From: Macrostomum lignano
Taxonomy: Eukaryota
Direction of reading: 5' to 3'
DNA: 57,415 nt
Assembly: GCA_002269645.1 (NCBI GenBank)
Contig: NIVC01003190.1
Coordinates: 1 to 57,415, forward strand
Shown here: in pieces, positions 6,617-51,720 of the stretch
How positions within the stretch are numbered: the first letter of the stretch is position 1
Layout of the letters: each line of letters begins with the position of its first letter
The notes under the pieces: model-generated
The model's input: only the letters and a program-made list of their open reading frames with translations
What the model was told of the DNA's origin: nothing
The model's database searches: none
Made by a program: the position numbers and the translations under genes

Positions 6617-6920
6617 TCAAAAGTTAAACGGATCGCTCATGTTCTTCTTATCGACGCCGTGTCCCTTCACTACCGCCTGGTGCGGGTCCCACGCCTCGAA
6701 GACGGGCAGGGGGGTGCTCCTCTCGCCCAGCACACCTCCACCAGCATCAGTTGAGCCATCGATGGCCGTTTCAACTTCCTCGACATCGGCATCTTGAGCC
6801 GTAGTCTCGGCCCGTTCGCTTCCTTGCTGGCTGCTAATTGGTCGTTCCGTCATCTCCTGGGCCTCGCGCTGCTCTGCTGAATCGCTGCCCGCGTTCACTG
6901 GATTAACCAGCTTCTTGGCG
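6617..6920 (-). CDS. Giant gene terminal exon: acidic cytoplasmic tail ending ...KKNMSDPFNF*
   Basis: Acceptor CACATTACAG at 6921; phase 2 matches donor CG|GTAAAT at 7665; in frame with ORF 6617-6898. Confidence 0.75.
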
Positions 6921-9900
6921 CTGTAATGTGATTTTCATAGGTATTTGGCTTTATACTGCTTTATGTGCTGTGTGAAAGCACTAAAACACGCTCACACAGA
7001 GTGTTCAGCGGCCCTGACTTTCTAATCGTCAGGAATGTACACCCTATGTAACTTTCTAATAGTCAGGAATGTACACCTATGTAACTTTCTAATCGTCAGG
7101 CATGTACACCTGTGTAACTTTCTAATCGTCAGGCATGTACACCCTGTGTAACTTTCTAATCGTCAGGCATGTACACCCTGTGTAACTTTCTAATCGTCAG
7201 GCATGTACACCCTGTGTAACTTTCTAATCGTCAGGCATGTACACCCTGTGTAACTTTTTTGGTTGGCTCTGATGAGTGTGAATCACGCGACAACCCTCAA
7301 CTAACCTTCGTGCACAAGCCCTAAATTCATGTAACCGCGCACGGAATCAAACCACGGGTCATGTGACGCAAGAGTTAGGCTCGTTTACATGTACCTCTGC
7401 TTTAATTTGCCTCGTATAAGTAGATCAGTGTCTGTAACAACTTACAACAACTACGATTATTATCTTAGTGGGGCCTGGAAAAAGTGAGATCCCAGACACA
7501 AACCTTAATATTTTGATTGTCAATTTAGCGCTGAAAACATAACTCTTTTTCCAAGAATATATGACCCCTTCTTCACTAGGAGCTACTGAAGCCCCGTCAC
7601 ACCCCTAGATCGCGAGTGAGTTAGCAGCCAAACTAAAACGTAAATCACTAGCGAAGCCATTTACCGTAGTCGGGATCTCAGCATCACCGCGCCAATGATG
7701 GCGCCGGCCAGCACGAGGGCGACACCCAAGGCGATAAGAGTCGGCACGAGCCAGTCCATCAGCGAGATTCCGGGCGGCGGTGTCTCGCAGTCGCCACCGG
7801 GCGGGCAGATGCAGGAGGCGCTGCCGTCGTCGCCAACTCTGCAGACCAGCGGCGGGTCGCAGCGAAGCAGCGCGCACGGGTCCGCGAGCTCGCAGCGGTC
7901 GCCCAGCCACCCGACGGGACAGCGGCACCAGTAGCCTTCGTAGCCGTCGGCCCGCCGCACGTCGCTGCAGTCGGGGTCCCACTCCGGTCCGCGACAGGTT
8001 CCGTTGTTCTGGCACGGCATCGCCAGCAGAGCCACGGTGACCTCCGCCGTGTCCGAGCCGCGCACCGAGCCGTTCAGCTCGAAGACGCCGGCGAACTCAA
8101 AGCTGAATCGGCCGTGGCCGCGGCCCTTTGGCCTGAACTCGTACACGTTAGTGAGCCACTTCGCCTCCTTGGGCAAGTTGTCAATTCCAGCTGGAGGCTG
8201 GGCGCTTGAGCTGAGCATAGACAGCTCGTGGCCGCCAGGACTTCTCAGACTTAGCTTGGCTGTCGCTCGGACTGAGGTGGCGCAGCTGATTGCGAACCTG
8301 ATGCCGCGCATGTCCGTCTCTTCTTGCTTTATCTGGACGCGGCAAAAGAGTAAAACATATTTTAACTCAAAAATGTACCATAAAACGGAAATAGCTTTCA
8401 AGAAAAACAAAGCCATTTCTTACCACCTCCCGCACCGGACCTTTCAGTGCGGTTCCGTCGCGTACAAAGTAAATATCGGTGCGGAACTGGCCGCCGCTCA
8501 CGCTGAGCTGGAAAACGCCGCGAGCTTGCTTCGCGGGGACCCCGGCTGGCGGCTGGTCCGTGACCACCAGCGGCAGGCTCTCCGTCCACTCCAGCTCGTC
8601 CACAGTGTAGCTCGGACGGTACACGAGCAGACCGTCCGCTGACAGGCTGGCCTGGCCGAACTTTGCGTCGCCTCGCAGCTCCCACACGACGGGATCGTCC
8701 TCTGGGTCCACGGCCAGCAGCTGCCGCTTGAATTCCACTGAAGATGGAGCATTTTTAAATAGATAAATGAGCATAAATGCGAAACATTTCACGGCGAGGC
8801 CCGGCCCTAGCGAAAAGTTTCTGGCTTGTGAGTACCATGTACTTTTATTGTTATTGGTGCACTACAAAAGTACAACACTGCTGACTCACCCACGACATCG
8901 TCACGAACTGTTAGCGATCCAGTGAGCTCCGATTGAATGACTGGTGCAGAGTTGAAAGGCTGCTTAGAGATGCTGCCCATAGCAAACATTCGCTCCTGAC
9001 CCAGGCTGACTGGAAGTCCCGCAGTTGCAGCCGTGTCGAACACTCCGGCCAGCTGCCAAAGCTGCTCATCTGAATGCATTTATAAATTTGCATGAGAATA
9101 TGTTTGTATCTAGTTCAATTAAACTTAATCCTAAGATTTGCATCCTCCGATAGTGCTTAAGATTGCTTCAAAGCTTAATTGCTGGGGGTTGTAGCCCAAT
9201 GGTTAGAGTGTCGGACCTACGACTGAAAGGTCAAGGGTTCGCTTCCCGACCCCACTGGGAACAATTTGTGTCCTTGAGCCAGACACTTAACTCTGGATTG
9301 CTTCCGTTCACCCAGCTGTAAAATGGGTGCCAGCATTAGCTGGGGTAATTGAGGGGGTGTGTGACGACCCCCCCCCCCCAGTCCTTGGACTGAACAGCCG
9401 TACGCAGCCTTCAGATGCGCCGCGAAGTAGCTATATGGTTGAGCTGCTTTTTACATTAATATTAATTCCTATTACTTCAAGGGTCATAAAAAATATTTCA
9501 AGAACCAAGCAATTACCCGCATCCCAATAAATAAGACTGTCAACAGTTTCATCCTCAGCTGCATCCCGACGAGTCCGTCGTTTTGCTGCATTTACTCCAG
9601 TCAGTTGCTGACTTCGTGCCACCTGCAGCTCGATGGTTGCTCTGCCGATTGGCGAGATCGCAAAGGTGGTGCCGAATTCGCGAATTCTTCGAGTCAAGAG
9701 GCGTCCTGTTCGGTGTTTAGTCCATTCTGGGTGCACGATGTACGGCTTGTAGTGAGACGCAGCCGATGAGTCATAGTCAGCCTTTGTTCGCTCGTCAGTG
9801 AGCTTCTCAAAGTACAGTGAGGTCCCGTTGGGATAGCTGCCAATGACTTTGACTTCGGGCATGTCGAGGCGGTCTGCATCTCTGAACTCCACCGGCAAGG

Positions 9901-12900
9901 CCTGTGTCTTCAGACTGGAGATTTGAAGCACAAGGGACTCATCAGGAACGATCGTCTGCTTGCTGAGCGTTCGGTTCGCGCATACGTAAGCCTTGGTGCA
10001 GGCGTGGAGCTTGATATAGATGGTCCTGAAGTTTAGAGAATATTATTTTTTACAGTGAAATCAAACTTAATGACTGTGTTGATGAGTAAGTAGTTCAGGC
10101 GTAATGACAAGTCTGTAAAGGCAAGTTTATTAATTATTAATCGACTCACTTTCCCGGCTCCAAGAAAAATCGGTTCCGCAACGATTCAACGGATGAGTTT
10201 CGGTTGAGACTCCCAAGGGTTATATTTTCGTCTGAGCCATCAAAATCGTTCCACTGAATAGTGTTATTTCGAATTTGAACGGTCACACCCGCGTCCGACT
10301 CGTTCATCTTTGGCGCAGGAATACACGGTAGAATGTCGTCGAGCCGGTCTTCTGCGCTGCTGATGCAGAACTCTGAAAAAGCAAAACCAAAAGCGTCAAC
10401 TGTATGCCATCATAAATTATTTAAATTGCTTGATTAAAATTGATGTCGAATAGAGAAAAGTACAACAACTCTAAGTTTGGGTTTGAAGGTTACCATAGTA
10501 CTCGACGCTCTTATCAAGATTAAACCGAAGTGTTGCCCCAACTACACTCTGATCGGTTTGCATCTTGGCATCCGGTGGAGACACTTCAAAGTCGAAGTCC
10601 TTAACGCCAACCAGGCTAGCGTTGATGTTGCCGAGTTCCGGTGGGTCGGTCATCACGGTCAGTCCGATCTTGTCGTAGTACGTTGTCGCGAGTCCTGCGT
10701 TATTTACAGATCGCACGCTGACGAAATACTTGCGGCCGTTAGTCAATACAAGCTGCGAGTTTGTGCCTGAAGGTAGCGCACCGACAGATGTCCAGGGCTG
10801 CAAGTCTGTGCCTTTTGGTGCACTGCCGATCGCCCAGAAATGTTCCTACAATTGAGGTAATTATGATCGGTACGTTTTCAACATCGCACCTGCTAAGTTT
10901 CGTTATTCAGAGCAGCTTACCATGATCAAGGACTCATTGTCGCTTATGATCCAAACTGCCCGAATTTCTGTAGTCGAGGCCGTGTAGTTTGTCGGCGCAT
11001 ACGGGTATGGAGCGGTGGGGTCATTATAGAATAGAGGTGCTTCATTGTCCACCTCAGGCGGTGTTGTATCAACAAGCTGCCCGGTGCTCAGAGACACAGC
11101 AGACTGACCATTTGCAAGTGTTGCTTTGACTAAAATATAAATGAAGTAAGGGGATCATTATTGAACTTAATAGCTCGTAATTGTATGCTTAAAAATTGAA
11201 AAGCAAAACTCACCCCCAAATTGGTATGTTTCGCCATCTTTCAATTTCAGCCCAGCTAGCATCAGTCGCACCTCTGTGAAGCCATTGTCTCTGCACTTGG
11301 GGTCGCAGTGCAGATAGTCGCAGTCGTGCAAGCAAGGTATGCAGGGCTTGTACAGAACCTGCCAGTCGGACACCTGAGTCTCATTCCAGAACACTGCGCC
11401 GCTGTAGGCAACGATGGGATTCGTGCCCGCAACGAAGGCGTTGCCGTAGCGACACTTCTCACTGGTTGGCTGGGGCAACCGCAGGTCCCTCAGCTTCACC
11501 ACCGAGCGCCAGCGATCGAGCACGTTGTCCGGATCGAGCGGCGGCACGAAGTTGGCCTTGGTGTGGGCTAGCAGGGTGACCCGAGCCTGCGGAATACTAG
11601 GCAGACCAGACACCACACCAAGCATAGCGCCATCAACCTCAACTCTGGCGGTCCATTCTCTATAGCCAGTGTCCTGGGCTATGCTAAAAAGTGCAAAGTG
11701 TAGTTGTGAAACTCCGCGCTGGGATCAAAGTCGAGCGAAATCAGCTCACGGACAGCCGGAAATGAGTTGTTGTCGTGAGTGCACCAGAGCAGAATAGCGG
11801 GACTGTCGGCTGGCTCGTATAGAATCTGTAATCCGCAGGCAGAGTGGATTCGGTTGATTTCATCAAAATCGCCTTGCAGAGTATCATCCGGCAGAGGCAG
11901 AGCATTCTCAATCAGCTTTGAGCCTGGGGCTCGTGTTGGTCTCGGGGTTGGTGGCGGCTGGCTGAGGTCCCTGCTCATATTTACCCTTAGGTAGTCCAAA
12001 AATTCCGGAGAGCATCCTTCGCAAAGATCGCTGCAGTTCGGAAATCGAATGGGGTCAGGGAAGACGCAGCAACTGCAGGTGTATTGAGACCAGTCTTCTT
12101 CAGGAACATAGTCGATGTCTCCAACTACGCCAGATGGGCCATTCCACAAAACCAGGCTGGTAACCACGCGACTGGAATTCGCCACCTGAGCTTTGAAGCT
12201 GTAGGAGGCACCAATGCCCAGATGTGAGTCCGCTTGTATGGCTCCAGATAGCACTCTTGCTGATGATAGATCGCGCTCCAGGTGCAGGTCCCAATCAGCA
12301 CCACCTTGACCAATTGGCGACGCCAAGTCATGGCGGAACCGCAAGCTCCACCACTCGTCCACATTCCAGAGCCCGGCTGTGTTAAGAGTTTGCCACTCAG
12401 TTCTACTGGGACTTCTGAGCGGGCAAGGATCAGCTGATGCCTTGGGGAAGTGCAGCAGCGTTGCGCGGAGGGAGTCAGACCTGCCGGAGTATTCTGCGTC
12501 CTCTGTAAAGTTCGAACCATCCGTGACGAAGCCCGCTGTTGGCATAGATATGTCCAGTAGGATTGGAGTTGTGCGGTGTCGTGTTATGAGCTCGGCTCGA
12601 TTTTCAGCCTCAATTGTTACAATATAGGGAACTCCAGGTTGCAGATCCAGATCTCGGAAGGTCACTTCGCTGATGGAAGCGGTGTCGTTGATTTTGACAG
12701 ATGCTTCCAGCCCAGTGATATCAGCGACCGCCGTGAGGTTCTTCAACTCGGATGGTGCACAGCCCTTTGCTCTCCAAAGTTGCAGCTTGATGTGCGACAG
12801 ACCTGAATCTGAGTCTTCGAAGCCTCGCCACTTGACATGCAGTGCGCCAGCCTCCAGAGAGAATGACAGTTTCTGAAAAGAGGGACTTAACACAGCCATC

Positions 12901-42900: not shown

Positions 42901-45900
42901 TCTGGCAGCCAGATTTCTTTCTCTTCGAAATCTGAAGTAAGATTGGCGAAAATCTTTGTTTAGGAAAAGCTAATCATTGATAGAGTACTGCTAGTTATTT
43001 TTATGTATCGGGAAACTAACAAGGTTACCTTCAGGAAAAAATCTGTTGAAATCGATTGTGTACACTATGGTCTTCACGTGCTTCATCTTGAGCCCGAACT
43101 CCAGCTTCTTGCTGCTGCCGCACGGGTCCAGCCTGGCCCAGAGTTTTGCCGCTTTGCGGAACACCTTCACCTTGAGGTCAATGCAGCACTCCACCGAGAG
43201 GCAGCTCTTGTCGAACTGACAGTAAACTGGTCTCGGCAGCGACAGCTGCAGAAGCGGACAGCCTGTGATGTTATTAAAATGAGATGAAGTATGAGCTACC
43301 GTCTGTATTTCCTAAAATATTGAATTCTAGAGCAAGCTTTACTCACGGGAATCACTCTGCTTCATCCTATCGATAAGACTGGCCTTTGGCATGACTTCCA
43401 CCTCCGATTTGCCAAAGCCTTTCTTAACGAGCTCGTTACGCAGCTCTTCCTCAGACATCAGGTAGGGGCTCTGGCACGGCTGATCTTCCAGTACATCCTT
43501 GATCGTCAGCAGTAGTTTATCCATTTTCTCCCTGGTCTTTTCGAAATGATTTTGAATCGCCGGAGCCTCTAGAAAGGCAACGACGTAGGCGAGTCTCAGG
43601 CGGCGCAAGCTGAACCTATCAAAGATTTTGTCGACGCCCAGCTTTTTTGGAAAGTCGAGAATGCTGGTTACCGCTTTGCCCACGTTGCCGAGAATGGAGC
43701 TGCGCGGCAGGCGAACTGAGTCAGCTTCCACGTTGGAAAAGAGATCGACTTCGTCAGTTTCAAGCGGCTCCACGGATTCCTCGGTTGCTTCTCTTTCAGG
43801 GCTGGTGTCCTCATCCTTCCGGCCTTTTAATCCCACGATCGCCCCTTCGGCGATCACGTTACCAAGTATCACCAGCTTGTAGTCGTCGCATTTCTGCTCC
43901 CACTTTGGCATTTTCATCACTCGAGGCTCAAGGTACTTGCTGGAATCCAGGTAGCGACCAGGGCCAGCCCTGGCGGATAGGTGAATGTGGTTTTCGCACT
44001 TGGGTGTCGAGCCAGTCACGCCGAGCTTGTCCCCAGCGCTCAGCTCCAAGCCCTCAGTTGGCTGGCTGTTTCCTTGCTCCATATCGAAGACTGGCAAGTC
44101 GCTGGCTTCAAATCGACCGTCATCCATCTCGAACTTCACGTTCTCCAAGATAAAGTGAAACTTTTCCATGCTGAATCCTTTCGGAACAATCACGAGCTGG
44201 TTAGAACCCTCGGGACCTCGGTAGTACTCGCCTTTAAACGGCACAACGACCTTTTCGCCAGGTTCCACGGCCAGATCCACGCCAGGATGATTCCACAGTT
44301 TGTCAGCGTCTGATGGATAGAAGCCATCGGATTTGCAACCTTTCCCGGCGAGCCGGTAAGTCCTTTGAAACTCGGAGTGCGCCCTCGGACCCATGATGGC
44401 TTCCGCTATGCTCCTGATCCTCTTCCAGCTCTCCTTGGCTCCTTGGTAGGCCTCCTTGAAGCCGCGAATAATCTGCAGAATTCCTTGGATCTGGTTTTCA
44501 AGTGGGCCGAAGGCTCCACGGAAGCCGCTCAACGGTTCCATCAACAGGTCCTGGACATCCTTTAGGAGGCCCACTAGCTTCATTGTTTCCTGAATGAAAA
44601 ATTTTGTTTTTTAAACCAAATTCACTGACATGTATAGACCTCAGTAATTTATTCATTACTGAAAATGTAGACGATCAAATGAACGATGTGGGTACTGTCG
44701 GTCGTACCGGTAAATTACTTTGAAAACAAAGTTACCAACAGCAACAACAACACAATCAAAACACGCTGTTAGTTAGTTTTTAAAGACTCAGAAGCATCAC
44801 AGGCAGTGGAGCGAAAGGCTTGAGCTTTTTGTAGAAAAATAAAACGAACTTGAGGTTGCACTTAAATATACTGCATTTGACAAGCAGAAATTCTCAGAGT
44901 CATTCTTTGCTAATGCATTTAGCGACTGAATTTTCTGTGAGCTACAAGGCTCGGTACTAAACTATAAGATAGTCGTAGACATTTTAGCTGTAAACTTTTG
45001 ACTATGCCAACCGGAGCTTCTACTTTCCCCACTTCGCAACTGATAAGAATTCTGTTCTATATTAGGAATTCAGATTTTCTTGGAAAAGCAGCAAATTCTG
45101 CACCAGGCGCAGATCGCTGAAATAGCTATAAGCGAGGCAGATAACAAGCCTGGTCCAGGGCTTCTATAGCGGAAATTTGATCGTGAAAAGTGGCAGGTAA
45201 ACAGAAAACAGGTGTCTCACTGAGTCCGACATTGCGCTAAACGGTCTCGTGCCGTTCTGTTGCGAGCCCTCCAGCGCTAAGACGGCCCGACGGCCTCTCT
45301 CCATGTGGCGCAGGGCCTCGGCGAATTCCGCCTTCAAGTTGCGATAGTGATCGGTCAGGTTCCACCAGTAGGGCTTCTCCTCTGAAACAAGCATTGTGAA
45401 GTATTCGTTAAGAAATGTTTTTTATGTTTTAGGTGCGACTTCTATAGATATAGCAGAACAAATTGCTCACCTTTCAAAAAGAAACACGCCTCAAGAGTTC
45501 GATTTTTGGCGTCGAGAAACCCGTTCACCCCCATTCCGATTTGGAAGAACGACTTGAATGCGTTCATGATGGCCTCCTTCGGGGAGCGGAAAATCCTTGG
45601 GAATATTTTCACCAGCAGATCCAAACCCTCCTTAGTTTGCTTTGCAGACATCGGGATTTGGTTCTCGATCGCGTCGTGTAGGGTCTAATTATTGGAATTC
45701 GGATCAGAAGCTTATCACACTTTAAACTATACATTTGAAAGTCGAATAACTGATTTCACTCAAAGTGCTATAAACTCACGTAATAGAATCCTGTAACATC
45801 GGCTTTGATATCGTTAGCCAGAGTGGCCATCTTCTTCAGTACCGCGAACAGCGGCCTCACGTGAGACGGCAACTCAAGCGGGTCGACCTCGGCCAGGATA

Positions 45901-48900
45901 TCCACCGCTTGTACAATCGATTTGGCGAGATCTGACACCACGTATGGCAGCCTTCGAAACTCCTTGCGCAAGTTTTTAGTTATGCTAAACACCTGGTTGG
46001 GATTTGAAGGTTCAAAGAGCTTTCGAAATCCGTTAATTGCGTCCTTGACACCTTTGTAGAGCGCTCCAATCGTCCGGTCGTAAAGCTTCACCAAATCCTG
46101 CACGCTGTTGACTCCGAACTCCTTCAGAATGCTGATCTTGTACTCAACACCGCCTCGAAAGCAGACTCTGGCCAGAAAGAAGTCAATGTGAATGCCAATT
46201 ACGCCCAGATGTCCTCTAGCGAAAACCTCGTCGTGCACGTTTACCGTAAGCTGACCCTCGATCAAGGCTGCATTTTTAAGGGCGTGTTTGGAATAAGTAG
46301 CATCTGATTGTTTCTATTATATACAGTATATAAGAATCAGCAAGGGTCAGCGTACCCAGCTTCACAATGAGCTCATTCAAGGCGGTCATTCCGAACGAGC
46401 CGCCGATTTTAGTGCTGCCGATCATCTTTTGCCAGTTGACGCCTGGAGCCGCCAGCTTCACATGGATTCCCTTCCACATTTTCTCGAGCACGCCTTGCAC
46501 GCTGCGCTTGGAGATATTGTGCGACATCAGCAGAGTTCCGTTATCAATTCTACAACACGGAGCGCGAATATATAGCAAAATAAATTATTCTTGATTTAAA
46601 CAAATTACATATAGGGTTAAAGAACTCGTTTTGAACGCACCCTTCAACAAATTCGCGATGCATGGTGACAATATCCTTAGTTTTTGACGGATGAGCCTCG
46701 TACATCAGGCTGGCCTCGTATCGAACGTGCTCGTCAGAGTCAGTTAGTGCGGCAGTGAGGATTGTTGACGCTGCCTGAAAACAGGATGCAAAAAACAAAA
46801 ATAAAAGTCCCGCTTGAGGAGAGCAATCAGACTGTTTACTACAAAGACAAACCTCAATGGTCTCGAATTTGCGCATAGAATGCAGTCCAGAACGCTTCCA
46901 CAGAGTGGGTGCCGACGACTCGTTAGAGTAGGACTGGATGACCTCAAATGAACTCTCAAAAGCGGCATTTCCTAAACTGTCAATCAGCGAAGACTTCAAG
47001 AATATGAACCTTTCGAATGTTGCATCGTCCATGACGTCCCTCTTTGACCGGTGATGGTACGGATCTGAAAGCGAGGCTTTTAAATTGTCAATTTTGAAGC
47101 TCTTTATGAAAGCAATTTCTGATATTTTTACTCACCGAAGACTTCGGTCAACTTTTCCAGCTGGCTAACTATGCTCTGAGCCATGGCCTTCTGCTGCTGG
47201 TTGCCGTAGCTTTGCATCAGGCGACAGACGGTGCCGAGGGCAAGCACGCAGCGGTGGTAAGTGTCCGGGTCGTTGATATCGGGCTGACCCTCGGGATTGA
47301 ACACAAACGTGACCAGAGTATTCACCAGGGCCTAAAACCATTTTTAAACAGCATCATTTTTATCATGGCACCCGGATGTTGGTACTCTTTGAGTCATGAA
47401 CGACTTAAGTAGAAGGTAATAACAATATCTGGTAATAATAAATCACAACACGAAACTAAAAAACAAATGTAATTGTGAACTCTGCACTCTGCAATATTAT
47501 GCTCTTCCAATTTTTTCCTACGAACAATACTTGGCTCATGTGCAATTCGAAAATCCAGAAGGAGAAATATTGCGAAGTTTAATGCTAAAATTGAAAATTT
47601 TGCTTTTTGATAACGCATTTTGCAACACGAGTCACGAGTTCAAAGCCCTACTTAAGCGGACTACCGTATTCTACGATTTCGATACGGCATTCCAAATTCT
47701 TCAGCTCACGTTTGCTGGGGCGTTCTTTCTTGTAGCCAGAAACACGAGCACCCTCTGGACGAGCTCCGGATGTCTGCTCCTGGACTTGAGAACCAGTTTA
47801 TTGATGATCAAGTCAGATGCAACGGAGCCAACACTGCAGACTGCATCCAGCATGGCCAGGAACCTCTTCTTCTCCAGGTCCTTTGTGCTGAAATGTAGGT
47901 AGATCAAGCAGCAAGTTACATGTGTGCTCGCTGCGGTTGATCTCAAAAGCAACAGCAGGTATCCCAATAAAAGCGCGAGCTTACATATTGCCATACGGCC
48001 GGTCCAAGTACATGGAAGCAATTTCATTCAGCTCTCGCTGAGACAGTCCTTGCAATATTTGAACCAAGTTGTGGTAGCAGTCGATAGCGTCGGATTTGGC
48101 TAAAATTTAGTGGCGTAAGACAAAAATAAAGTCAAGCAAAAGCTTTTCAACTTGACAAATAATTTAGCTAAGCAAACTCACATTCCGCAGTGTCGGTGGC
48201 TATACAGGTGAGGTTGGAGTCGATGCCGCGCCGAACGTCTCGTAAATCGTAGTCGGACTGGAACACCTCATGCAGCTGAAACACGGATAGTGAGTTGGCA
48301 TGTACTGCGATGCTCAAAACGCTAACTGGCAACTCCATGAGCTCACCCTGGTCTGGTTAATATTCTCAGACGCCAGCTTTGCTGGTCTCTGTTTGATCGG
48401 TGAAGCGTCTCGAACTTCAGATAGCGTGAACTCCGATTTTGCCGTGGTGGTCACCCTGGACACACTTGTCGGATCTTCGTGCTCCCTGTCCATCACCACC
48501 CGTGGGCCCTTCCTGACCTTGACGCCCGAATCGAAGCTGAAATATTGAGATTAGAAAAACGTTCCTTATTTTAGAGTACCTGTTTACATGTATGAGGATG
48601 CTCATGAGGCAGATAGACGCTTCGCTGAACTCACCCTTCAGGTTGATCATTAAAGAAGTGGATCTCATCGTGTATGAAAGTTCTGTCAGGCAGACGTGTG
48701 ACGTGATTGTAGTGCATGGTCTGGAATAATTAGAGAATGACAGTAGCCTTTATAGCAGGAGGGCATTCGGGCCGACTGGAAGATCGTCCAGCCTCCAGTC
48801 GCACGCCAAAAATGGCGCCCAACTGCAATACGCTTCTCCAAAATGCAAAAGCGCATTTCCAATCTTGATGATGGAAAGAAGCTCCATTCTAGCCGCATCT

Positions 48901-51720
48901 TTTACAGGCATATGCATACCTTCCAAGCCATAGGGTACCAAAAGACGGGGGTAGCTACAAGAGACAGGGAAATCAAGAGGCAGGGTCGACTTAAAAGACA
49001 GGGGCGCCCACCAAGAGACAGGAGCACCCACCTAAGAGACAAATTCAGCCACCAAGAGACAGTAGCACCCACCTAAGAGACAAATTCAGCCACCAAGAGA
49101 CAGGAGCACCCACCTAAGAGACAAATTCAGCCACCAAGAGACAGGAGCACCCACCTAAGAGACAAATTCAGCCACCAAGAGACAGTGTCAGCCACCAAGA
49201 GACAGGAGCACCCACCTAAGAGACAAATTCAGCCACCAAGAGACAAATTCAGCCACCAAGAGACAAATTCAGCCACCAAGAGACAGTAGCACCCACCTAA
49301 GAGACAGTGTCAGCCACCAAGAGACAGTAGCACCCACCTAAGAGACAAATTCAGCCACCAAGAGACAGTAGCACCCACCTAAGAGACAGTGTCAGCCACC
49401 AAGAGACAGTAGCACCCACCTAAGAGACAGTGTCAGCCACCAAGAGACAGTAGCACCCACCTAAGAGACAGTGTCAGCCACCAAGAGACAGTAGCACCCA
49501 CCTAAGAGACAGTGTCAGCCACCAAGAGACAGTAGCACCCACCTAAGAGACAGTGTCAGCCACCAAGAGACAGTAGCACCCACCTAAGAGACAGTGTCAG
49601 CCACCAAGAGACAGTAGCACCCACCTAAGAGACAAATTCAGCCACCAAGAGACAGGGGCACCCACCTAAGAGACAGTGTCAGCCACCAAGAAACAGGGGC
49701 ACCCATCTAAGAGACAGGGTCGCCCACCAAAAGACAGTTGCTCCAATCAAGAGACAGGGGTGCCACTCAAGACACCCCAAGAGTTTCGCCTTCTCCTCCA
49801 GTACAAATCGTGTGTACGCCTGTGCTGCAAAGAATTGTCATAAAAGTGTGAAAGCTTACATGGGTGACATTTCTGTGCACGTTGTTCCCATGAACTCCGC
49901 GTCTGGTCTTTGAAATCTCGGTGTGATACCGACCGATGGTGCGATTCTTGGTGCTCCACTCGTGAGTGTTGTGGAACTTGTACTCCTGAATTGGGTTTAC
50001 ATAAAGCAGCTTTGAAGTGTTATTCAATGAAATTTTGGCGGTGAGAGGAAATATATGCATGGAAACTGAAATTTTCGGGCCTACGTCATCGTGTCCAAGA
50101 AGCGCTGTGACCATGGCCTTCTTCACAGTGGCCAAGAACGCAGTCTCGTCATGCGGATACCGGACATGGCTGACCCGGCCGGCTGGGTCCAGGTGGAAGC
50201 TGAACCAGCCATCCAGCTTGACGTCGCTGCCCTGACCCGCAGTCTGGCCTCGGCCGTTCCTGGCGTGCAGCTTTGTCAACGTCAGGGCCAGGTGCTGAGA
50301 TCCATCCGGCTCCTTGCCTTGCAGCTGGATGGAAAACTGAAAACCGGGGATCGATGTTAGGGTTGAAACAGCTGAGGCAATGACATTCAAGAAAATGAGA
50401 TAAAAGCAGCAAAGTTGCGAGTTCATTGATTCAGCCATATCGATGCTGGAACATTTCTGATCGGAGCAAAGACTCGGCTATAAACCAACCCCGAAACTCG
50501 GCCATCAACCAACCCCGAAACTCGGCCATCAATCAACCTCAAGACTCGGCCATCAACCAACCCCAAGACTCGGCCATAAACCAACCCCAAGACTCGGCCA
50601 TAAACCAACCCGAGACTCGGCCATAAACCAACCCCGAGATTCGGCCGTAAACCAACCCCGAGATTTGGCCATAAACCAACCCCGAGCTTCGGGCATAAAC
50701 CAACCCCGAGCTTTGGCCATAAACCAACCCGAGCTTCGGCCATAAACCAACCCCGAGCTTCGGCCATAAACCAACCCGAGCTTTGGCCATAAACCAAGCC
50801 CGAGCTTCGGCCATGAACCAAACCCGAGACTCGGCCACAAACCAACCCCGAGCTTCGGCCATAAACCAAGCCCGAGACTCGGTCATAAACCAACCCCGAG
50901 CTTCGGCCATAAACCAAGCCCGAGCTTCGGCCATGAACCAAACCCGAGACTCGGCCACAAACCAAACCCGAGACTCGGCCATAAACCAAACCCGAGACTC
51001 GGCCATAAACCAACCCGAGCCCAATCCCGAGCTTCGGGCATAAATCAACCCCGAGCTTCGGCCATAAACCAACCCCGAGATTTGGCCATAAACCAAGCCC
51101 GAGACTCGGTCATAAACCAACCCCGAGCTTCGGCCATAAACCAAGCCCGAGCTTCGGCCATGAACCAAACCCGAGACTCGGCCACAAACCAACCTCGAGC
51201 TTCGGCCATAAACCAAGCCCGAGACTCGGTCATAAACCAACCCCGAGCTTCGGCCATAAACCAAGCCCGAGCTTCGGCCATGAACCAAACCCGAGACTCG
51301 GCCACAAACCAACCTTAAGATATTAAATTTTTTTTAACTGCAATTGATCAAAATTTCTTAACTTTCTCTTTAATCTTAATAAATTTAAATCAATATAGTC
51401 AATGGGTGATAAAAATTAAGCTACATGCATTATTACCTGTCTAGGTAAATATTAACGGTAATAAAAGCAGTTAGGTTGATTTTTAAAACTCCTACAGGTG
51501 CATACACGTCACTAAGCGATTGTACAATTGTTTCTACCTGGCCTGTGACGAACAGGTCACCGATGTCCTTGGTTTTCGTGTGCGTCTCCACATCGTACAC
51601 GTACTGCTTGCCCTCCTTGAAGGAGAACACGGACTCTGCCGGCTTCACAGCTGCCGCAGCGAGCAGCAGCAGAAGCGGCAGGCCCAGCAGGCTGATGCCG
51701 CCACCTCTGCTGGATGGCAT
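6617..51720 (-). CDS. Giant (~9,170 aa) multidomain type I membrane protein: LLTP/vitellogenin-N, M23/LECT2-like, 21x Cys-rich repeat, PAN, FN3 array, GH16-like, cadherin-like, EGF, TM; 68 exons, 4 apparent 1-bp frameshifts
   Basis: Hand-spliced GT-AG exons (minus strand, 5' to 3'): 51720-51538, 50336-50085, 49985-49860, 48720-48635, 48536-48347, 48275-48182, 48099-47985, 47887-47710, 47331-47136, 47064-46853, 46774-46641, 46549-46356, 46267-45780, 45684-45471, 45381-45221, 44589-43347, 43262-43029, 42931-42264, 42192-42063, 41964-41365, 40599-40274, 39752-39494, 38539-38229, 38147-37877, 37799-37507, 37235-36977, 36905-36751, 36486-36331, 36250-35989, 35915-35755, 35672-35535, 34947-34689, 34231-34071, 33817-33451, 32826-32663, 32137-30652, 30543-30380, 30293-29226, 26381-26031, 25952-25755, 25674-24607, 24529-24185, 24103-21346, 21245-20958, 20903-20689, 20500-20161, 20078-19784, 19696-19547, 19475-18602, 18505-17391, 17288-16953, 16867-15906, 15837-15684, 15345-15033, 14936-14673, 14580-14447, 14110-13578, 13497-13295, 13185-12940, 12872-11214, 11129-10921, 10845-10494, 10372-10150, 10025-9517, 9069-8890, 8737-8424, 8332-7665, 6920-6617. 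The sum is 27,518 nt; adding 4 restored bases gives 27,522 nt = 9,173 codons + stop, and phases match at each junction. A few boundaries (e.g. 46641, 36331) are less certain. Confidence 0.85.
6987..7400 (-). mobile_element. tRNA-derived SINE family B copy containing an internal tandem array
   Basis: Shares CAC..TCACAC..GTGTT..CAGCGGCCCT and TTCGTGCACAAGC(C/T)CTAAATT with the copies at 34323 and 35049; B-box-like GGTTTGATTCC on the minus strand. Confidence 0.6.
7017..7257. repeat. 34-bp tandem array (7 copies)
   Basis: Unit ACTTTCTAATCGTCAGGCATGTACACCCTGTGTA; copies 2 and 3 are 33 bp, copies 4-7 are identical. Confidence 0.95.
7679..8015 (-). CDS. Giant gene: two EGF-like modules and transmembrane helix
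   Basis: PCQNNGTC...YWCRCPVGWLGDRCE (EGF pattern), then DPCALLRCDPPLVC...CICPPGGDC, then hydrophobic WLVPTLIALGVALVLAGAIIGAVML followed by basic RSRLR. Confidence 0.9.
8530..8960 (-). CDS. Giant gene: cadherin-like/Ig-like domain
   Basis: NSAPVI...LLAVDPEDDPVVWEL...GQASLSADGLLVYRP...LVVTD resembles the AxDxD/GxxxYxP pattern of cadherin-like (Big_9-type) folds. Confidence 0.55.
9184..9445 (+). mobile_element. tRNA-derived SINE family A (CORE-like central domain)
   Basis: A-box TAGCCCAATGGTTAGAG, B-box GGTTCGCTTCCC, then TGTGTCCTTGAGCCAGACACTTAAC...CAGCTGTAAAATGGG, similar to the CORE-SINE motif; near-copies at 39927 and 40774. Confidence 0.85.
9960..20430 (-). CDS. Giant gene: array of ~17-18 FN3-like repeats
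   Basis: Recurrent W-x-x-F-x-D-P-E-S-G-I-x-x-Y...G and Y-F-V-x-V-x-A-x-N-x-A-G-L...D-x-T-P-P...G-x-V-x-D-G motifs (e.g. SDPESDIKEF, NDPESGVTHY, QDPESGISRY, RSVNNAGL). Confidence 0.8.
11600..12400 (-). CDS. Giant gene: concanavalin-A/GH16-like beta-jelly-roll domain with degenerate catalytic motif
   Basis: WDLHLERD...SGAIQAD...GASYSFKAQV...VVTSLVLWN...GDIDYV...LDFDPSAEFHNYTLHF...VEVDG follows GH16 motif order (L-x-L, SGxIxS, YG/F, ExDxE, FDPxxxFHxY, VDG). Confidence 0.6.
11686..11690 (-). other. Apparent 1-bp deletion frameshift 4 in giant gene (T5, expected T6)
   Basis: CAC TTT TTA GCA TAG stops; one extra T gives H-F-F-S-I-A-Q-D-T-G-Y-R-E-W-T-A-R-V-E-V-D-G, continuing into ORF 11167-11625. 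Confidence 0.75.
14026..14030 (-). other. Apparent 1-bp deletion frameshift 3 in giant gene
   Basis: Frame A gives GLNLQNGETYFAIVSGTTAL then stops; frame B gives HIITVRSSGVVI. One extra G (CTA GGT CAC) joins them into a normal FN3 strand. Confidence 0.8.
19390..19696 (-). CDS. Giant gene: PAN/apple domain
   Basis: SFLCAEDCLKQGDKCRAFNYHSVNKVCEL matches the PAN CxxxC...CxAFxY...CxL pattern across exons 48-49. Confidence 0.75.
22050..43262 (-). CDS. Giant gene: 21 tandem copies of an unrecognised ~190-aa cysteine-rich repeat
   Basis: Approximate consensus C-P-x(8-16)-C-x5-C-x4-C-C-x2-L...W-x2-[VLI]-D-P-C...G-F-E-x-W...W-G...L-x-Y...C-x(3-5)-C...L-P-x-P-x-C...W...N-R-L-G...Q-C; 21 C-x5-C-x4-CC cores counted. 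Confidence 0.88.
23812..23822 (-). other. Apparent 1-bp deletion frameshift 2 in giant gene
   Basis: Frame A gives LILNRLGLQFDDM; the repeat continues in frame B as HQQCEVDYLQ...CTPTKSCTGMECC. One extra base after ATG restores the LNRLG...QC linker consensus. Confidence 0.8.
26632..26671 (-). ncRNA. Minimal type I hammerhead ribozyme motif (inverted pLTR copy)
   Basis: Reverse complement is identical to 28414-28453: CC-CUGACGA-U-GUCC-loop-GGAC-GAAA-UGCA-UC-GG. Confidence 0.65.
26680..28227 (+). CDS. Penelope-like reverse transcriptase / GIY-YIG endonuclease, N-terminally truncated, 515 aa open
   Basis: LYGLCKVHK..PLRPIVS, SFDVVSLFTNIP, GCAMGSPLAP, YKRYVDDTF, LPFLD (RT motifs); GVVYKFVC...YIGKTKR...R..EH...LEALYI...PTLNNQ (GIY-YIG). 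Starts at TTG at the inversion junction, so there is no true start. Confidence 0.93.
   Translation: MNVLTHPILKNERSLQNFLRTYVKPHVSPEIFKVIVPNGSQPGQLYGLCKVHKDGHPLRPIVSMINTSEYELAKFLDNLIKPVIPSEHCVGSNKQFIESLSNTTINQTDRLYSFDVVSLFTNIPLDFTIELAADLVYEKTDPPPFSKATFKKMLKFATSGIFLFRDKYYRQIDGCAMGSPLAPTLANLCMAHWEKDWMALPCAPHFYKRYVDDTFAIFEDEAKKDEFFKLINSTHENIKFTAEGGGRRLPFLDIDVDATDETISTSVYRKPSFTGLMLRFDALCPRQWKTGLIRCFLHRAFSTCSSWRLFHNEVEILTNLLSYNGYPKNFVMKIVNSFLNDKLTEPNRMKVRDSTSECPLITLPYFGVCSIEFKKKLEKLLRKDLNTQIRVVFRTEKIAKFVCKLKSSVPRPLAAGVVYKFVCSEDQSISYIGKTKRHLYTRVREHWLKNSAINEHLLTCNSCCEAEPHEMIKAIDFCNRDHMLCLLEALYIKTKQPTLNNQLAMGGASRQLRIF
28414..28453 (+). ncRNA. Minimal type I hammerhead ribozyme motif in the 3' pLTR
   Basis: Core CUGACGA 28416-28422, extra U, stem II GUCC/GGAC (28424-27 / 28438-41), GAAA 28442-45, palindromic helix III AUGCAU, cleavage triplet AUC (cut after 28451); helix I only 2 bp (CC/GG). 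Confidence 0.7.
28525..29204. mobile_element. Possible solo LTR or unclassified insertion in intron 38
   Basis: GC-richer than the intron background; TGATGT (28525) ... ACATCA (29204) 6-bp inverted ends (the first 3 bases overlap the PLE call); TATAAATA at 28561; no TSD found. Confidence 0.3.
34323..34601 (-). mobile_element. tRNA-derived SINE family B, full length
   Basis: Minus strand starts GGGGAATCGTAGTCCAGTGGTCTAGCG (A-box) ... GGATTCAAAT (B-box-like); body nearly identical to 40983-41183. Confidence 0.8.
35049..35248 (-). mobile_element. tRNA-derived SINE family B-related copy
   Basis: Minus-strand CTCAGTGGTTAA (A-box) and GGGTTCCATTCC (B-box); shares body motifs with the copies at 6987 and 34323. 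Confidence 0.6.
38738..39427. repeat. 15-bp tandem array, 46 copies
   Basis: (GGCGCCAGCACCAAA)46; only two units carry a single substitution; lies in intron 22. Confidence 0.98.
39927..40200 (+). mobile_element. tRNA-derived SINE family A copy
   Basis: GGTTCGATTTCC B-box, TCCTTGAGCAAGACACTTAAC...CAGCTGTAAAATGGG; same body as the 9184 copy. Confidence 0.82.
40774..41320 (+). mobile_element. SINE family A copy interrupted by a family B fragment
   Basis: Head GGGGTTGTAGCCTGGTGGTTAGAG; body resumes at 41188 after the insert; 50-bp duplication 40927-40976 / 41188-41237. Confidence 0.82.
40983..41183 (-). mobile_element. SINE family B, 5'-truncated, nested in SINE A
   Basis: Aligns to about the first 190 bp of the 34323 copy (ATTACTTGCCCTCCCCTGAGCAGGGCG...TTTAGCCT) but lacks the tRNA head. 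Confidence 0.82.
42378..42383 (-). other. Apparent 1-bp deletion frameshift 1 in giant gene
   Basis: Frame A gives KCRNGPLQLELPQFLVH*; frame B gives LRSRVFCQVSPNCTKFECC. One extra C (CAA TTC CCT GGT GCA CTG AGA) joins them into repeat 2. Confidence 0.8.
43930..44370 (-). CDS. Giant gene: LECT2-like M23 zinc metallopeptidase domain
   Basis: HxxxD motif NHPGVD (44289-44275) followed by VVVPFKG; LSAGDKLG; HxH motif HIH (43989-43981) then YLDSSKYL. Same order and similar wording as LECT2 (HQGVD..VYAPFTG..KGEKLG..HVH..DPTAYL, recalled from memory). Confidence 0.82.
46641..51720 (-). CDS. Giant gene: signal peptide and vitellogenin/MTP-like (LLTP) lipid-transfer N-terminal domain
   Basis: Hydrophobic leader LLGLPLLLLLAAAAVKPAES; FKEGKQYVYDVET...WFSFHLDPAGRVSHVRYPHDETAFLATVKKAMVTAL (beta-barrel N-sheet pattern); helical LALGTVCRL, LIDSLGNAA, AALTDSDEHVRYEA, typical of the LLTP alpha-domain. 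Confidence 0.75.
48940..49775. repeat. Composite 20/21-bp (41-bp dimer) tandem array
   Basis: Alternating CCACCAAGAGACAG(T/G)(A/G)GCAC and CCACCTAAGAGACA(GTGT/AATT)CAG; degenerate at both ends; lies in intron 3. Confidence 0.95.
50470..51315. repeat. 24-bp tandem array (~35 copies) with a 120-bp higher-order period
   Basis: Unit CGAG(CT/AC)TCGGCCATAAACCAACCC with 23-bp variants; 51121-51195 is identical to 51241-51315; lies in intron 1. Confidence 0.95.

What the first reader, a model, noticed from the sequence alone, without database searches (positions are those of the whole stretch)
6617..51720. A ~9,170-aa membrane receptor combining lipid-, peptidoglycan- and glucan-handling folds
Seen in sequence: about 130 ORF fragments on the minus strand splice into one 68-exon reading frame with signal peptide, LLTP-N, M23, 21 novel repeats, PAN, FN3 array, GH16-like, cadherin-like, EGF, TM and tail. 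Established: LLTP domains bind lipid; M23 enzymes cut peptidoglycan cross-links; non-catalytic GH16 domains serve as beta-glucan sensors in invertebrates (betaGRP/GNBP/CCF). Inference: three modules related to microbial walls or lipids on one furin-processed surface protein suggest an undescribed multi-ligand pattern-recognition or gut-uptake receptor. I do not recognise this architecture as a named family.
Basis: partly seen in the sequence, partly recalled or inferred. Interest (0 to 1): 0.92.

Follow-up and report, generated by a model that had tools for sequence, protein, structure and literature searches.

The report
Giant flatworm surface protein, uncharacterised family
The window holds one real ~9,100-9,200-residue single-pass membrane protein gene of the flatworm Macrostomum lignano, belonging to a widespread invertebrate family found only as 'uncharacterized' database entries; it joins a vitellogenin-like head, enzyme folds lacking canonical catalytic residues (M23, GH16) and 21 copies of a domain with no solved structural relative, and its function is untested.

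Summary
On the minus strand, 51720 (ATG) to 6617 (stop), GT-AG splicing gives one frame of 65-69 exons and 8,760-9,190 aa. The control strand gives 1,165 aa and shuffles at most 134 aa. The model is colinear end to end with ~5,200-aa proteins of amphioxus and an acorn worm, so it is one gene. Its C-terminal third matches a Macrostomum lignano UniProt entry.

Domain calls:
- M23 is confirmed by profile (PDB M23/LytM E=5e-7). One catalytic His is Glu, and the site is degenerate in most orthologues.
- The GH16-like fold is confirmed (Foldseek top 50 all GH16, E=1.7e-9). No member has the ExDx(x)E motif.
- PAN, about 17 FN3-like units, EGF, one TM and 21 repeats are confirmed.
- LLTP-N rests on the helical half of Pfam Vitellogenin_N only.
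- The cadherin-like call is weak.

The repeat folds confidently (pLDDT 90) with no PDB neighbour, yet it occurs in at least 1,365 database proteins, some with 7-15 copies.

The pattern-recognition or uptake reading is untested inference. I favour a non-enzymatic surface binding or adhesion protein. This window copy has three apparent 1-nt frameshifts. I found no paper describing the family.

The parts
6617..51720 (-). Whole coding span of one gene: ATG at 51720, stop codon at 6617-6619, about 66-69 exons, about 9,100-9,200 aa
   Evidence: Exon-chaining models; strand and shuffle control; colinearity with full-length orthologues
51637..51720 (-). Signal peptide (aa 1-28, MPSSRGGGISLLGLPLLLLLAAAAVKPA)
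   Evidence: Hydrophobic segment aa 6-28, one of only two real ones; read directly from the sequence
46471..51636 (-). LLTP / Vitellogenin_N-like N-terminal module (aa ~29-620). The Pfam match covers only the helical half (aa 353-546, window 46862-47892).
   Evidence: Pfam Vitellogenin_N E=2.5e-4, 20.2 bits, below the cut-off of 24; orthologue P0063 4.8e-16. No PDB LLTP hit with profile A6.
44398..46470 (-). Short beta segment plus long helical region of unknown function (aa ~621-1010), conserved in orthologues
   Evidence: Colinear alignment; no Pfam or PDB match
43933..44310 (-). M23 / LytM-type domain (aa ~1040-1165). HPGVD and NHIH are present; the LytM H260 equivalent is Glu.
   Evidence: Pfam weak hit on the exon; profile A4 against PDB M23/LytM/LECT2; active-site columns
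22006..43491 (-). 21 tandem repeats of ~175-190 aa (aa ~1313-5320). Each has an N-terminal helix (SAP-like in the single-copy orthologues) followed by a disulfide-rich nine-strand beta domain.
   Evidence: Motif count and alignment; AF2 pLDDT 90.3; no PDB neighbour; 1,365 database relatives
38738..39431 (.). Intronic 15-nt minisatellite (46 copies), open in all frames; not coding
   Evidence: TRF; removed
50470..51314 (.). Intronic 24/48/72-nt minisatellite in intron 1; not coding. A further array lies at 48996-49772.
   Evidence: TRF
26680..28227 (+). Penelope-like retroelement ORF (RT plus GIY-YIG) inside the 2.8-kb intron
   Evidence: Pfam RVT_1 3.1e-9, GIY-YIG 1.5e-6
21931..21942 (-). Furin-type motif RNKR (aa 5342-5345) just after the repeat array
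   Evidence: Regex on the model; cleavage is inferred only
20691..21348 (-). Conserved Gly-rich beta region of unknown fold ('FPTRAEIGFSKFPL', aa ~5540-5700)
   Evidence: Conserved in all orthologues; no PDB sequence relative
19387..19604 (-). PAN / apple domain (aa 5955-6003)
   Evidence: Pfam PAN_1 E=2.2e-6, 27.9 bits, cut-off 21.4
12537..19449 (-). Array of about 15 FN3-like units of ~112 aa (aa 5983-7854), with a recurrent W..F.D.ESGI motif
   Evidence: Pfam fn3 1.3e-11; iterative self-HMM finds 17 units in all
11353..12491 (-). GH16-like beta-jelly-roll (aa ~7870-8225), with a Cys-rich insertion and a C-terminal Cys knot; no ExDx(x)E motif
   Evidence: Profile against PDB; AF2 plus Foldseek; motif scan
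10636..11352 (-). Two further FN3-like units (aa 8226-8411)
   Evidence: Self-HMM
9560..9577 (-). Furin-type motif KRRTRR (aa 8683-8688). Orthologues carry RRRR/RKRR-type sites in the same juxtamembrane region.
   Evidence: Regex; orthologue sequences read; cleavage is inferred
8556..8953 (-). Cadherin-like / bacterial-Ig-like (Big_9) domain (aa 8742-8823)
   Evidence: Pfam Big_9 E=0.001, 20.4 bits, below the cut-off of 23.6; orthologue P0019 9.8e-7
7787..8014 (-). Two EGF-like modules (aa 8974-9049)
   Evidence: Cys spacing read from the sequence; EGF_CA in orthologue P0005, 4.8e-6
7673..7747 (-). Single transmembrane helix (aa ~9063-9087)
   Evidence: Kyte-Doolittle scan
6620..7672 (-). Cytoplasmic tail, ~100 aa, acidic (includes the last intron)
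   Evidence: Model
11679..11749 (-). Apparent 1-nt frameshift inside the GH16-like exon. The frame reads ...AVRELISLDFDPSAEFHNYTLHFLA* and then continues in another frame (SIAQDTGYREW).
13995..14044 (-). Apparent 1-nt deletion relative to P0001 (CTAGT where CTNAGT is needed)
23750..23830 (-). Probable 1-nt frameshift at the start of repeat 19. The Cys-containing start of the repeat is in another frame.
   Evidence: comparison with the other repeats

Best explanation
This is a single, very large type I membrane glycoprotein gene of Macrostomum lignano. It belongs to a conserved invertebrate family that exists only as 'uncharacterized' database entries.

Order of parts, N to C:
- signal peptide
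- vitellogenin-N-like (LLTP) head
- helical region
- M23/LytM-type domain
- 21 copies of a disulfide-rich beta domain
- a conserved unknown region
- PAN domain
- about 15 FN3-like units
- a GH16-like jelly roll
- 2 more FN3-like units
- a juxtamembrane region with a dibasic site
- a cadherin-like domain
- EGF modules
- TM helix and a short tail

Shown: the exon chain, the colinearity with orthologues, and the fold assignments.

Inferred: the two enzyme-derived folds act as binding modules, not enzymes. The GH16-like domain has no catalytic Glu motif in any member. The M23 site lacks one catalytic His here and is degenerate in most orthologues. The protein would then stand as a long stalk on the cell surface and present glycan- or peptide-binding modules far from the membrane, probably after furin-type cleavage into associated fragments. 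It would bind extracellular polysaccharide or peptidoglycan-like material, either for recognition or for adhesion and matrix organisation.

The flatworm gene differs from the ~5,000-aa orthologues mainly by having 21 copies of a domain that most members carry once.
For: - One gene.
- Species: the best hit is the M. lignano UniProt entry P0001, 95% identity in the search table. Most exons match at 97-100% in tblastn.
- Family breadth: 71 hits from sponge, annelids, molluscs, echinoderms, hemichordates and amphioxus, many carrying PF01347, PF01551, PF00024 and PF00041.
- M23 fold. Its active-site state.
- GH16 fold. No catalytic motif in 30 of 30 family segments.
- Repeats: 21 copies. One copy in most relatives, but 7-15 in some bivalve, abalone and amphioxus proteins.
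- Single-pass topology.
- Some amphioxus paralogues add C-type lectin and Sushi domains, which fits a binding or recognition role.
Against: - There are no expression, localisation or binding data of any kind.
- In this flatworm protein the M23 zinc ligands (H, D, H) and one catalytic His are all present. Residual or altered peptidase activity is therefore not excluded.
- The LLTP call rests on the HEAT-like helical half only. No lipid-cavity sheets were detected.
- The AF2 model of the GH16-like region is of moderate confidence (pLDDT 67.5, 16 sequences). It was built from the P0001 subsequence, which lacks part of one strand.
- The window copy has three apparent frameshifts, so this particular copy may not be functional.
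Confidence: 0.6

Rival explanations
1. One reading: a multi-ligand pattern-recognition or gut-uptake receptor that senses lipid, peptidoglycan and beta-glucan through its LLTP, M23 and GH16 modules.
For: - The GH16-like fold has no catalytic motif. From established knowledge, this is the state of the glucanase-like domains of insect betaGRP/GNBP and earthworm CCF.
- The M23 fold resembles degenerate binders such as LECT2, SpoIIQ and DipM.
- There are many paralogues in amphioxus and bivalves, some fused to C-type lectin and Sushi domains.
Against: - No ligand, expression or challenge data exist.
- Near 1:1 colinear conservation from sponge to amphioxus is more typical of a structural or developmental protein than of a fast-evolving immune receptor.
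- The tail shows no signalling motif that I recognised.
- The LLTP lipid-binding sheets were not detected.
- The M23 site varies between orthologues.
Confidence: 0.25
2. A structural apical-matrix or cell-adhesion protein. It would be a long FN3/repeat rod anchoring extracellular matrix, mucus, cilia or neighbouring cells, with the enzyme-like folds serving only as matrix-binding modules.
For: - About 17 FN3-like units, 21 beta-domain repeats, PAN, cadherin-like and EGF modules, one TM and a short tail.
- Deep colinear conservation.
- Juxtamembrane dibasic sites, as in other processed giant surface proteins (inference).
Against: - Nothing in the sequence identifies a matrix partner.
- The lineage-specific paralogue expansions are unusual for core matrix proteins.
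Confidence: 0.3
3. The copy in this window is a decaying duplicate (pseudogene) of an intact paralogue or allele.
For: - Three apparent 1-nt frameshifts at about 23825, 14030 and 11690.
- P0001, from the same species, reads through the site near 14030. It differs at 5 isolated amino-acid positions over about 3,000 aa.
- M. lignano's genome is known to be heavily duplicated (own knowledge).
Against: - All three are single-base indels in 27.5 kb of otherwise open frame with no premature stop. That is what uncorrected long-read assembly errors look like.
- Codon-bias and splice signals are intact throughout.
Confidence: 0.25
4. An active membrane-tethered peptidoglycan hydrolase, with a catalytic M23 domain in the flatworm and a few mollusc members.
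For: HxxxD and HxH are both present in the window protein and in P0054, P0050, P0056 and P0060.
Against: - The residue aligned with LytM H260 is Glu here, and Asn, Ser or Val in relatives.
- Most orthologues lack the first His. The family as a whole is therefore not under selection for catalysis.
Confidence: 0.1
5. An artefactual merger of two or more neighbouring genes.
For: - The UniProt entry P0001 covers only model aa 5651-8702.
- No M. lignano protein was returned for the N-terminal part. That search also missed known orthologues, so this is weak evidence.
Against: - Both halves occur in single proteins, in the same order, in other phyla.
- There is no start or stop signal or long intergenic gap between the parts.
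- The repeat domain that links the halves is present at the same place in the orthologues.
Confidence: 0.05

Closest known systems
Uncharacterized ~5,000-aa proteins of amphioxus, hemichordates, crinoids, brittle stars, molluscs, annelids and a glass sponge (e.g. B. lanceolatum P0006, Glandiceps P0003, Owenia P0030, Oopsacas P0047)
   Same: - The same domain order from signal peptide to TM.
- 25-34% identity over nearly the full length.
- The same M23, repeat domain, PAN, FN3-like array, GH16-like, cadherin-like and EGF modules.
   Different: - Most have one copy of the Cys-rich beta domain where the flatworm has 21.
- Their M23 sites are usually more degenerate.
- Some add C-type lectin and Sushi domains.
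Multi-repeat relatives (Pinctada P0028, 15 copies; B. lanceolatum P0061, 11; Haliotis P0041, 10; Potamilus P0072, 15; Sinanodonta KAL3862601.1, 6,862 aa)
   Same: Arrays of the same beta domain. P0074 carries the UniRef name 'Vitellogenin domain-containing protein' and has 9 repeat stretches.
   Different: - Fewer copies.
- Many are partial gene models.
- Whether their arrays share ancestry with the flatworm array or expanded independently was not tested.
Large lipid transfer proteins (vitellogenin, apoB, apolipophorin II/I, MTP)
   Same: - N-terminal position directly after the signal peptide.
- The Vitellogenin_N helical domain is matched.
- An LLTP-like first-strand motif (F..GK.Y.Y), judged from own knowledge.
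   Different: - No match to the beta-barrel half of the profile or to any solved LLTP.
- No DUF1943, DUF1081 or vWD lipid-cavity domains.
- Membrane-anchored rather than secreted.
- About 8,500 further residues of unrelated domains.
Degenerate LytM/M23 domains (LECT2, SpoIIQ, DipM, EnvC/NlpD-type 'LytM factors')
   Same: M23 fold with an incomplete catalytic set. These are among the profile hits.
   Different: - Those are small proteins.
- Here the domain is one module of a giant eukaryotic surface protein.
- The flatworm copy keeps the zinc triad.
Non-catalytic GH16-like domains of invertebrate glucan-binding proteins (betaGRP/GNBP, LGBP, CCF)
   Same: GH16 jelly-roll fold without the ExDx(x)E catalytic motif.
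   Different: - No direct sequence or structure comparison with those proteins was possible here.
- This domain carries a ~100-aa Cys-rich insertion.
- It sits within an FN3 stalk.
- Glucan binding is untested.

Membership tests
Peptidase M23 (LytM-type) fold | Sequence-profile similarity to M23 domains | tested here: met
   Family profile A4 against the PDB: 5kqb M23 5.2e-7, LytM 1.1e-6, lysostaphin, zoocin A, LECT2. Pfam M23 in orthologue P0063: 2.7e-12, 47.1 bits, cut-off 28.7. The window exon alone scores only 17.2 bits.
Peptidase M23 (active enzyme) | Complete catalytic set: HxxxD, the mid-domain catalytic His (LytM H260) and HxH | tested here: not met
   The window protein has HPGVD and NHIH, but Glu at the position aligned with LytM H260. 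Most orthologues also lack the first His and/or the first His of HxH. Only the last His is invariant.
GH16 fold (concanavalin-like beta-jelly-roll of GH16 type) | Structural and profile similarity to GH16 domains | tested here: met
   Profile A1: the top 11 PDB hits are all GH16 beta-glucanases or lichenases, E from 1.4e-3, including the 'FDxSxxFHTY' strand. AF2 model (pLDDT 67.5): the Foldseek top 50 are all GH16, best E=1.7e-9, TM(target) 0.63-0.67.
GH16 (active glycoside hydrolase) | Catalytic ExDxE / ExDxxE motif on the strand after the 'W.GP' strand | tested here: not met
   The motif is not found at the expected position in any of the 28 of 30 family segments where the 'W.GP' strand could be located. 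The few E.D..E matches lie elsewhere in the segments. The window protein reads WNGPSGVVGDIDYV.
Large lipid transfer protein superfamily | Vitellogenin_N (lipoprotein N-terminal) domain above the Pfam threshold | tested here: inconclusive
   Window protein: 20.2 bits against a cut-off of 24, profile positions 348-524 only. Orthologues P0063 (58.9 bits) and P0026 (25.0 bits) match profile positions ~316-571 only. PF01347 is precomputed for many of the 71 relatives. The beta-barrel half is never matched.
Large lipid transfer protein superfamily | Similarity to solved LLTP structures, and lipid-cavity beta-sheet domains | tested here: not met
   N-terminal profile A6 against the PDB returns only HEAT-like alphaRep proteins and M23; no lipovitellin, MTP, apoB or vitellogenin. 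No DUF1943, DUF1081 or VWD in Pfam scans.
PAN / apple domain | Pfam PAN_1 above threshold | tested here: met
   27.9 bits, cut-off 21.4, E=2.2e-6
Fibronectin type III | Pfam fn3 above threshold; repeated ~100-aa units | tested here: met
   45 bits, cut-off 25, E=1.3e-11. A self-HMM finds 17 units of ~112 aa.
Cadherin-like / Big_9 | Pfam match above threshold | tested here: inconclusive
   Window protein: 20.4 bits against a cut-off of 23.6. Orthologue P0019: 30 bits. Cadherin_4 and Cadherin_5 are precomputed for some molluscs.
Furin-processed surface protein | Cleavage at R-x-K/R-R sites | not testable with these tools
   Motifs RSKR484, RGRR921, RNKR5342 and KRRTRR8683. Orthologues show RRRR/RKRR in the juxtamembrane region. 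Cleavage itself needs protein work.
Pattern-recognition receptor (betaGRP/GNBP-like) | Binding of beta-1,3-glucan, peptidoglycan or lipid; induction by microbes or an immune phenotype | not testable with these tools
   No binding or expression data are obtainable here. No literature was found.

The most novel reading that the evidence does not exclude
The family is an undescribed, metazoan-wide class of membrane-anchored LLTP-derived surface receptors. In it, two bacterial-type wall-degrading folds (M23, GH16) have been turned into recognition modules. A disulfide-rich beta domain with no solved structural relative, here amplified to 21 copies, forms a new kind of ligand-binding or spacer array. 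On this reading the protein is a genuine multi-ligand microbial sensor or uptake receptor of invertebrate epithelia.
Probability: 0.2. Interest if true: 0.8.

Novelty: new variant of a known kind. Interest (0 to 1): 0.6.

Why it matters
- It would add a large, conserved and entirely unstudied branch to the LLTP-related proteins. The family runs from sponge to amphioxus and was not seen among the hits from vertebrates or ecdysozoans, although absence was not tested.
- It gives a clear example of M23 and GH16 folds reused without their catalytic residues in animal surface proteins.
- It defines a new extracellular domain. The fold prediction is confident, there is no Pfam model and no PDB neighbour, and at least 1,365 clustered database proteins carry it.
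- If a binding function is shown, it could bear on how invertebrate epithelia recognise microbes or organise their surface coat.
- For annotation, existing M. lignano gene models split this locus.

Tried and rejected
1. The 864-aa repeat exon searched in the 5.8-billion-protein index found nothing. The N-terminal 1,316 aa also found nothing. Local BLAST and HMM searches find strong relatives for both, so these are failures of the word prefilter and not evidence of absence.
2. Counting the open minisatellites as exons was rejected after TRF.
I used the P0001 subsequence instead.
4. A single-sequence PDB search with P0063 was too weak. Profiles were needed.
5. A profile of the conserved region after the repeats found no PDB relative.
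6. Looking up contigs that encode P0001 found nothing on record.
7. I considered a GPS/GAIN domain, because UniProt names P0001 'GPS domain-containing'. Pfam gives no GPS hit at E up to 1. Orthologues show only a loose GPS-like Cys/Trp pattern with a dibasic site. I left this as a note.
8. Seven literature searches for the domain combination, LECT2 with amphioxus, and the UniProt accession found no description.
Full report
**What is in the window.** The window is eukaryotic. It has many short open frames on the minus strand, and the longest are 300-860 codons.

I wrote an exon-chaining program that uses codon log-odds learned from the long open frames, generic GT/AG site matrices and an intron penalty.
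- Without masking it returns 67 exons and 9,218 aa.
- Two of those 'exons' are minisatellites open in all frames (15-nt unit at 38738-39431; 24/48/72-nt unit at 50470-51314). With them masked the model is 65 exons and 8,760 aa.
- With per-codon bonuses from tblastn matches to homologues it is 69 exons and 9,190 aa.
- In every run the ATG is at 51720 and the stop at 6617, and no internal stop occurs.
- There are 68 introns, all GT-AG, with a median length of 95.5 nt.
- The same program finds a chain of only 1,165 aa (score 20 against 1,072) on the other strand, and at most 134 aa on shuffles. The codon table was trained on this strand, so I treat this control as supportive only.

**One gene, and whose.** The C-terminal 3,219 aa found 71 relatives. 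The best is a 2,998-aa UniProt entry of Macrostomum lignano (P0001, A0A1I8J5S5, 'GPS domain-containing protein'). Its exons match the window at about 97-100%.

The others are 3,500-5,400-aa 'uncharacterized' proteins of these groups:
- amphioxus
- acorn worms (Glandiceps, Ptychodera)
- a crinoid and a brittle star
- many molluscs
- annelids (Owenia, Ridgeia)
- the glass sponge Oopsacas

Many of these carry precomputed Pfam Vitellogenin_N, Peptidase_M23, PAN and fn3.

Local BLASTP shows that my model is colinear with full-length orthologues. Model aa 14-1512 and 5562-9049 match amphioxus P0006 residues 6-1472 and 1555-5012. Glandiceps P0003 gives the same picture. The N-terminal and C-terminal halves therefore belong to one protein in other phyla. 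What the flatworm adds is about 4,000 residues in the middle. P0001 is a partial model covering aa 5651-8702 of my model.

**The middle: 21 repeats.** A Cys motif (C..C.G..CC) occurs 20 times, plus one variant. An alignment of the 21 units of about 175-190 aa shows a helix ('sGLlvNRLgl') followed by a conserved Cys-rich beta region. The units are only about 20-40% identical to each other, so the array is old.
- An HMM of the unit finds exactly one copy at the same place in most relatives. There it follows a SAP motif (Pfam SAP in P0063).
- It finds arrays in some relatives: Pinctada 15 copies, B. lanceolatum 11, Haliotis 10, Potamilus 8 and Saccostrea 7.
- An exhaustive profile search of 1.84 billion cluster representatives gives 1,365 proteins at E up to 1e-3 and 582 at E up to 1e-10. 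The ten long hits that I looked up are unnamed bivalve, amphioxus and crinoid proteins, including a 6,862-aa Sinanodonta model.
- AlphaFold2 on one unit lying wholly inside exon 34, with 34 aligned sequences, gives pLDDT 90.3 and pTM 0.83. The model is a helix plus nine strands.
- Foldseek against the PDB finds nothing at E up to 1e-3. The best hit has E=0.089 and TM-scores of about 0.3 or below.

'Novel repeats' is therefore fair in the sense of no Pfam model and no solved relative. The domain is not peculiar to this gene.

**M23.** Pfam gives only a weak hit on the window exon (17.2 bits) but a clear one on orthologue P0063 (47.1 bits). A 16-sequence family profile hits PDB M23 peptidases (5kqb 5.2e-7, LytM 1.1e-6), the degenerate SpoIIQ (3.6e-5), LECT2 (5e-4), zoocin A and lysostaphin.

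In the HMMER alignment to LytM the window protein keeps HxxxD (HPGVD) and HxH (NHIH). It has Glu where LytM has the catalytic H260. Most orthologues also lack the first His and/or the first His of HxH, and only the last His is invariant. The residue roles are from established knowledge of LytM and lysostaphin. The fold is M23, but the family is not conserved as an enzyme.

**GH16-like.** A profile of model aa 7845-8271 from 16 species hits only GH16 lichenases and beta-glucanases at the top of the PDB list, with E from 1.4e-3. The alignment runs through the strand 'LDFDPSAEFHNYTLHF', which corresponds to GH16 'LGFDASKGFHTYAF'.

The AlphaFold2 model used a P0001 subsequence as first row. It has pLDDT 67.5 and pTM 0.66, and its low-confidence parts are the Cys-rich insertion and the ends. 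The top 50 Foldseek hits are all GH16 enzymes (lichenases, laminarinases, carrageenases, agarases, porphyranases). The best has E=1.7e-9 and TM(target) 0.63-0.67.

None of the 30 family segments has ExDxE or ExDxxE after the 'W.GP' strand. The window protein reads WNGPSGVVGDIDYV.

**LLTP.** This is the weakest of the three key calls.
- With the improved model, Vitellogenin_N scores 20.2 bits (E=2.5e-4, cut-off 24) on aa 353-546.
- P0063 scores 58.9 bits and P0026 scores 25.0 bits. In all cases only profile positions ~316-571 match, which is the helical half.
- An N-terminal family profile finds HEAT-like artificial repeat proteins and M23 in the PDB, and no lipovitellin, MTP, apoB or vitellogenin.
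- The position right after the signal peptide and the 'F.F.EGKQYVY' start resemble LLTPs. This is from my own knowledge and was not tested.
- No lipid-cavity domains were detected.

**The rest.**
- PAN_1 (27.9 bits) and fn3 (45 bits) pass Pfam.
- A self-trained HMM finds 17 FN3-like units.
- Big_9 is below threshold here (20.4 bits) but above it in P0019.
- The EGF modules are visible by their Cys spacing, and EGF_CA is found in P0005.
- The only real hydrophobic segments are aa 6-28 and 9056-9089. A third segment at aa 7391-7417 is intron sequence wrongly included in my model.
- Dibasic motifs occur at aa 484, 921, 5342 (RNKR, just after the repeats) and 8683 (KRRTRR). Orthologues have RRRR/RKRR-type sites in the same juxtamembrane region. 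Cleavage is inferred.
- A conserved Gly-rich region after the repeats (aa ~5540-5700) has no PDB relative.

**State of this copy.** Comparison with P0001 shows that a few of my exon borders are wrong. It also shows that the window carries single-base indels.
- At about 14030 the window reads CTAGT where CTNAGT is needed to continue '...TTALSHIITVRSSG'.
- At about 11690 the GH16-like exon runs into a stop and resumes in another frame.
- At about 23825 the Cys-bearing start of repeat 19 lies in another frame.

These could be assembly errors or real lesions in one of several near-identical copies. P0001 also differs from the window at 5 isolated amino-acid positions.

**How it most likely works.**

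Shown:
- a signal peptide, a very long extracellular part, one TM and a short acidic tail
- two enzyme folds without full catalytic sets
- many beta-sandwich spacers

Inferred: it is a cell-surface protein that holds binding modules far from the membrane, probably after furin-type processing. It would bind extracellular glycan or peptide polymers.

Paralogue expansions and the lectin and Sushi fusions in amphioxus lean towards recognition. The deep colinear conservation and rod-like build lean towards a structural role.

**Novelty.** Seven full-text searches for the domain combination, for LECT2 with amphioxus, and for the UniProt accession found no description. The sequences are public, but all hits that carry a name are labelled 'uncharacterized' or 'hypothetical', or bear automatic names. 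I rate this a new variant of known kinds (LLTP-related, giant mosaic surface proteins). It is of moderate to high interest mainly for three reasons: the family is unstudied, its repeat domain has no solved relative, and its enzyme folds lack canonical catalytic residues.

Noticed in passing
window 26680-28227 (+), inside the 2.8-kb intron between 29226 and 26381: A 515-aa ORF with reverse transcriptase (RVT_1, 3.1e-9) and a GIY-YIG endonuclease domain (1.5e-6). This is the domain pair of Penelope-like retroelements. It lies antisense to the gene.
   Followed up: partly
window 54870-55472 (+): An ORF with a strong Mob1/phocein match (E=1.5e-60), about 3 kb beyond the start of the giant gene on the opposite strand. 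It is a separate neighbouring gene.
   Followed up: partly
window 4878-5159 (-) vs 6617-6920; also 4351-4415 vs 6064-6128: The last coding exon and part of its 3' flank are tandemly duplicated about 1.7 kb downstream (92-94% DNA identity). The copy encodes '...ERAETTAQDADVEEVEMAIDGSTDAGGGGLGKRSTPLPVFEAW...'. It could be an alternative terminal exon or a remnant of a duplication.
   Followed up: partly
window ~23825, ~14030, ~11690 (-): Three apparent single-base frameshifts lie inside otherwise conserved exons. The M. lignano UniProt protein P0001 reads through the site near 14030. These are either assembly errors or lesions in a duplicated copy.
   Followed up: partly
window 38738-39431, 48996-49772, 50470-51314, 7017-7257, 56417-57402, 144-427: Several long minisatellites (units of 15-74 nt, up to 46 copies), mostly in introns. 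Two are open in all frames and inflate naive ORF-based gene models.
   Followed up: yes
model aa ~5540-5700 (window 20691-21348) and orthologues: A strongly conserved Gly-rich, amphipathic-strand region ('GPVP..F.F.AGG ... FPTRAEIGF.KFPL ... PLRL.L'). It has no Pfam and no PDB sequence relative. It is a second unknown module of the family.
   Followed up: partly
model aa ~8530-8760 (window ~9340-10030) and orthologues read: The region before the cadherin-like domain has a loose GPS-like pattern (YW...W...C......C...hF.l..V), with a dibasic RRRR/RKRR site between the last Cys and the final strand. UniProt names P0001 'GPS domain-containing'. Pfam shows no GPS hit at E up to 1.
   Followed up: no
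P0026 / P0029 (amphioxus paralogues): Some amphioxus family members end in Sushi repeats and a C-type lectin domain (Pfam 1.2e-22 and 3.6e-21). They were auto-named 'SELE'. The family has been remodelled at its C-terminus in that lineage.
   Followed up: no
The search for homologous proteins: Two searches returned nothing, although strong relatives of both queries exist in the same collection. The word prefilter missed them. Negative results from that tool on low-identity, long queries should not be read as absence.
   Followed up: yes
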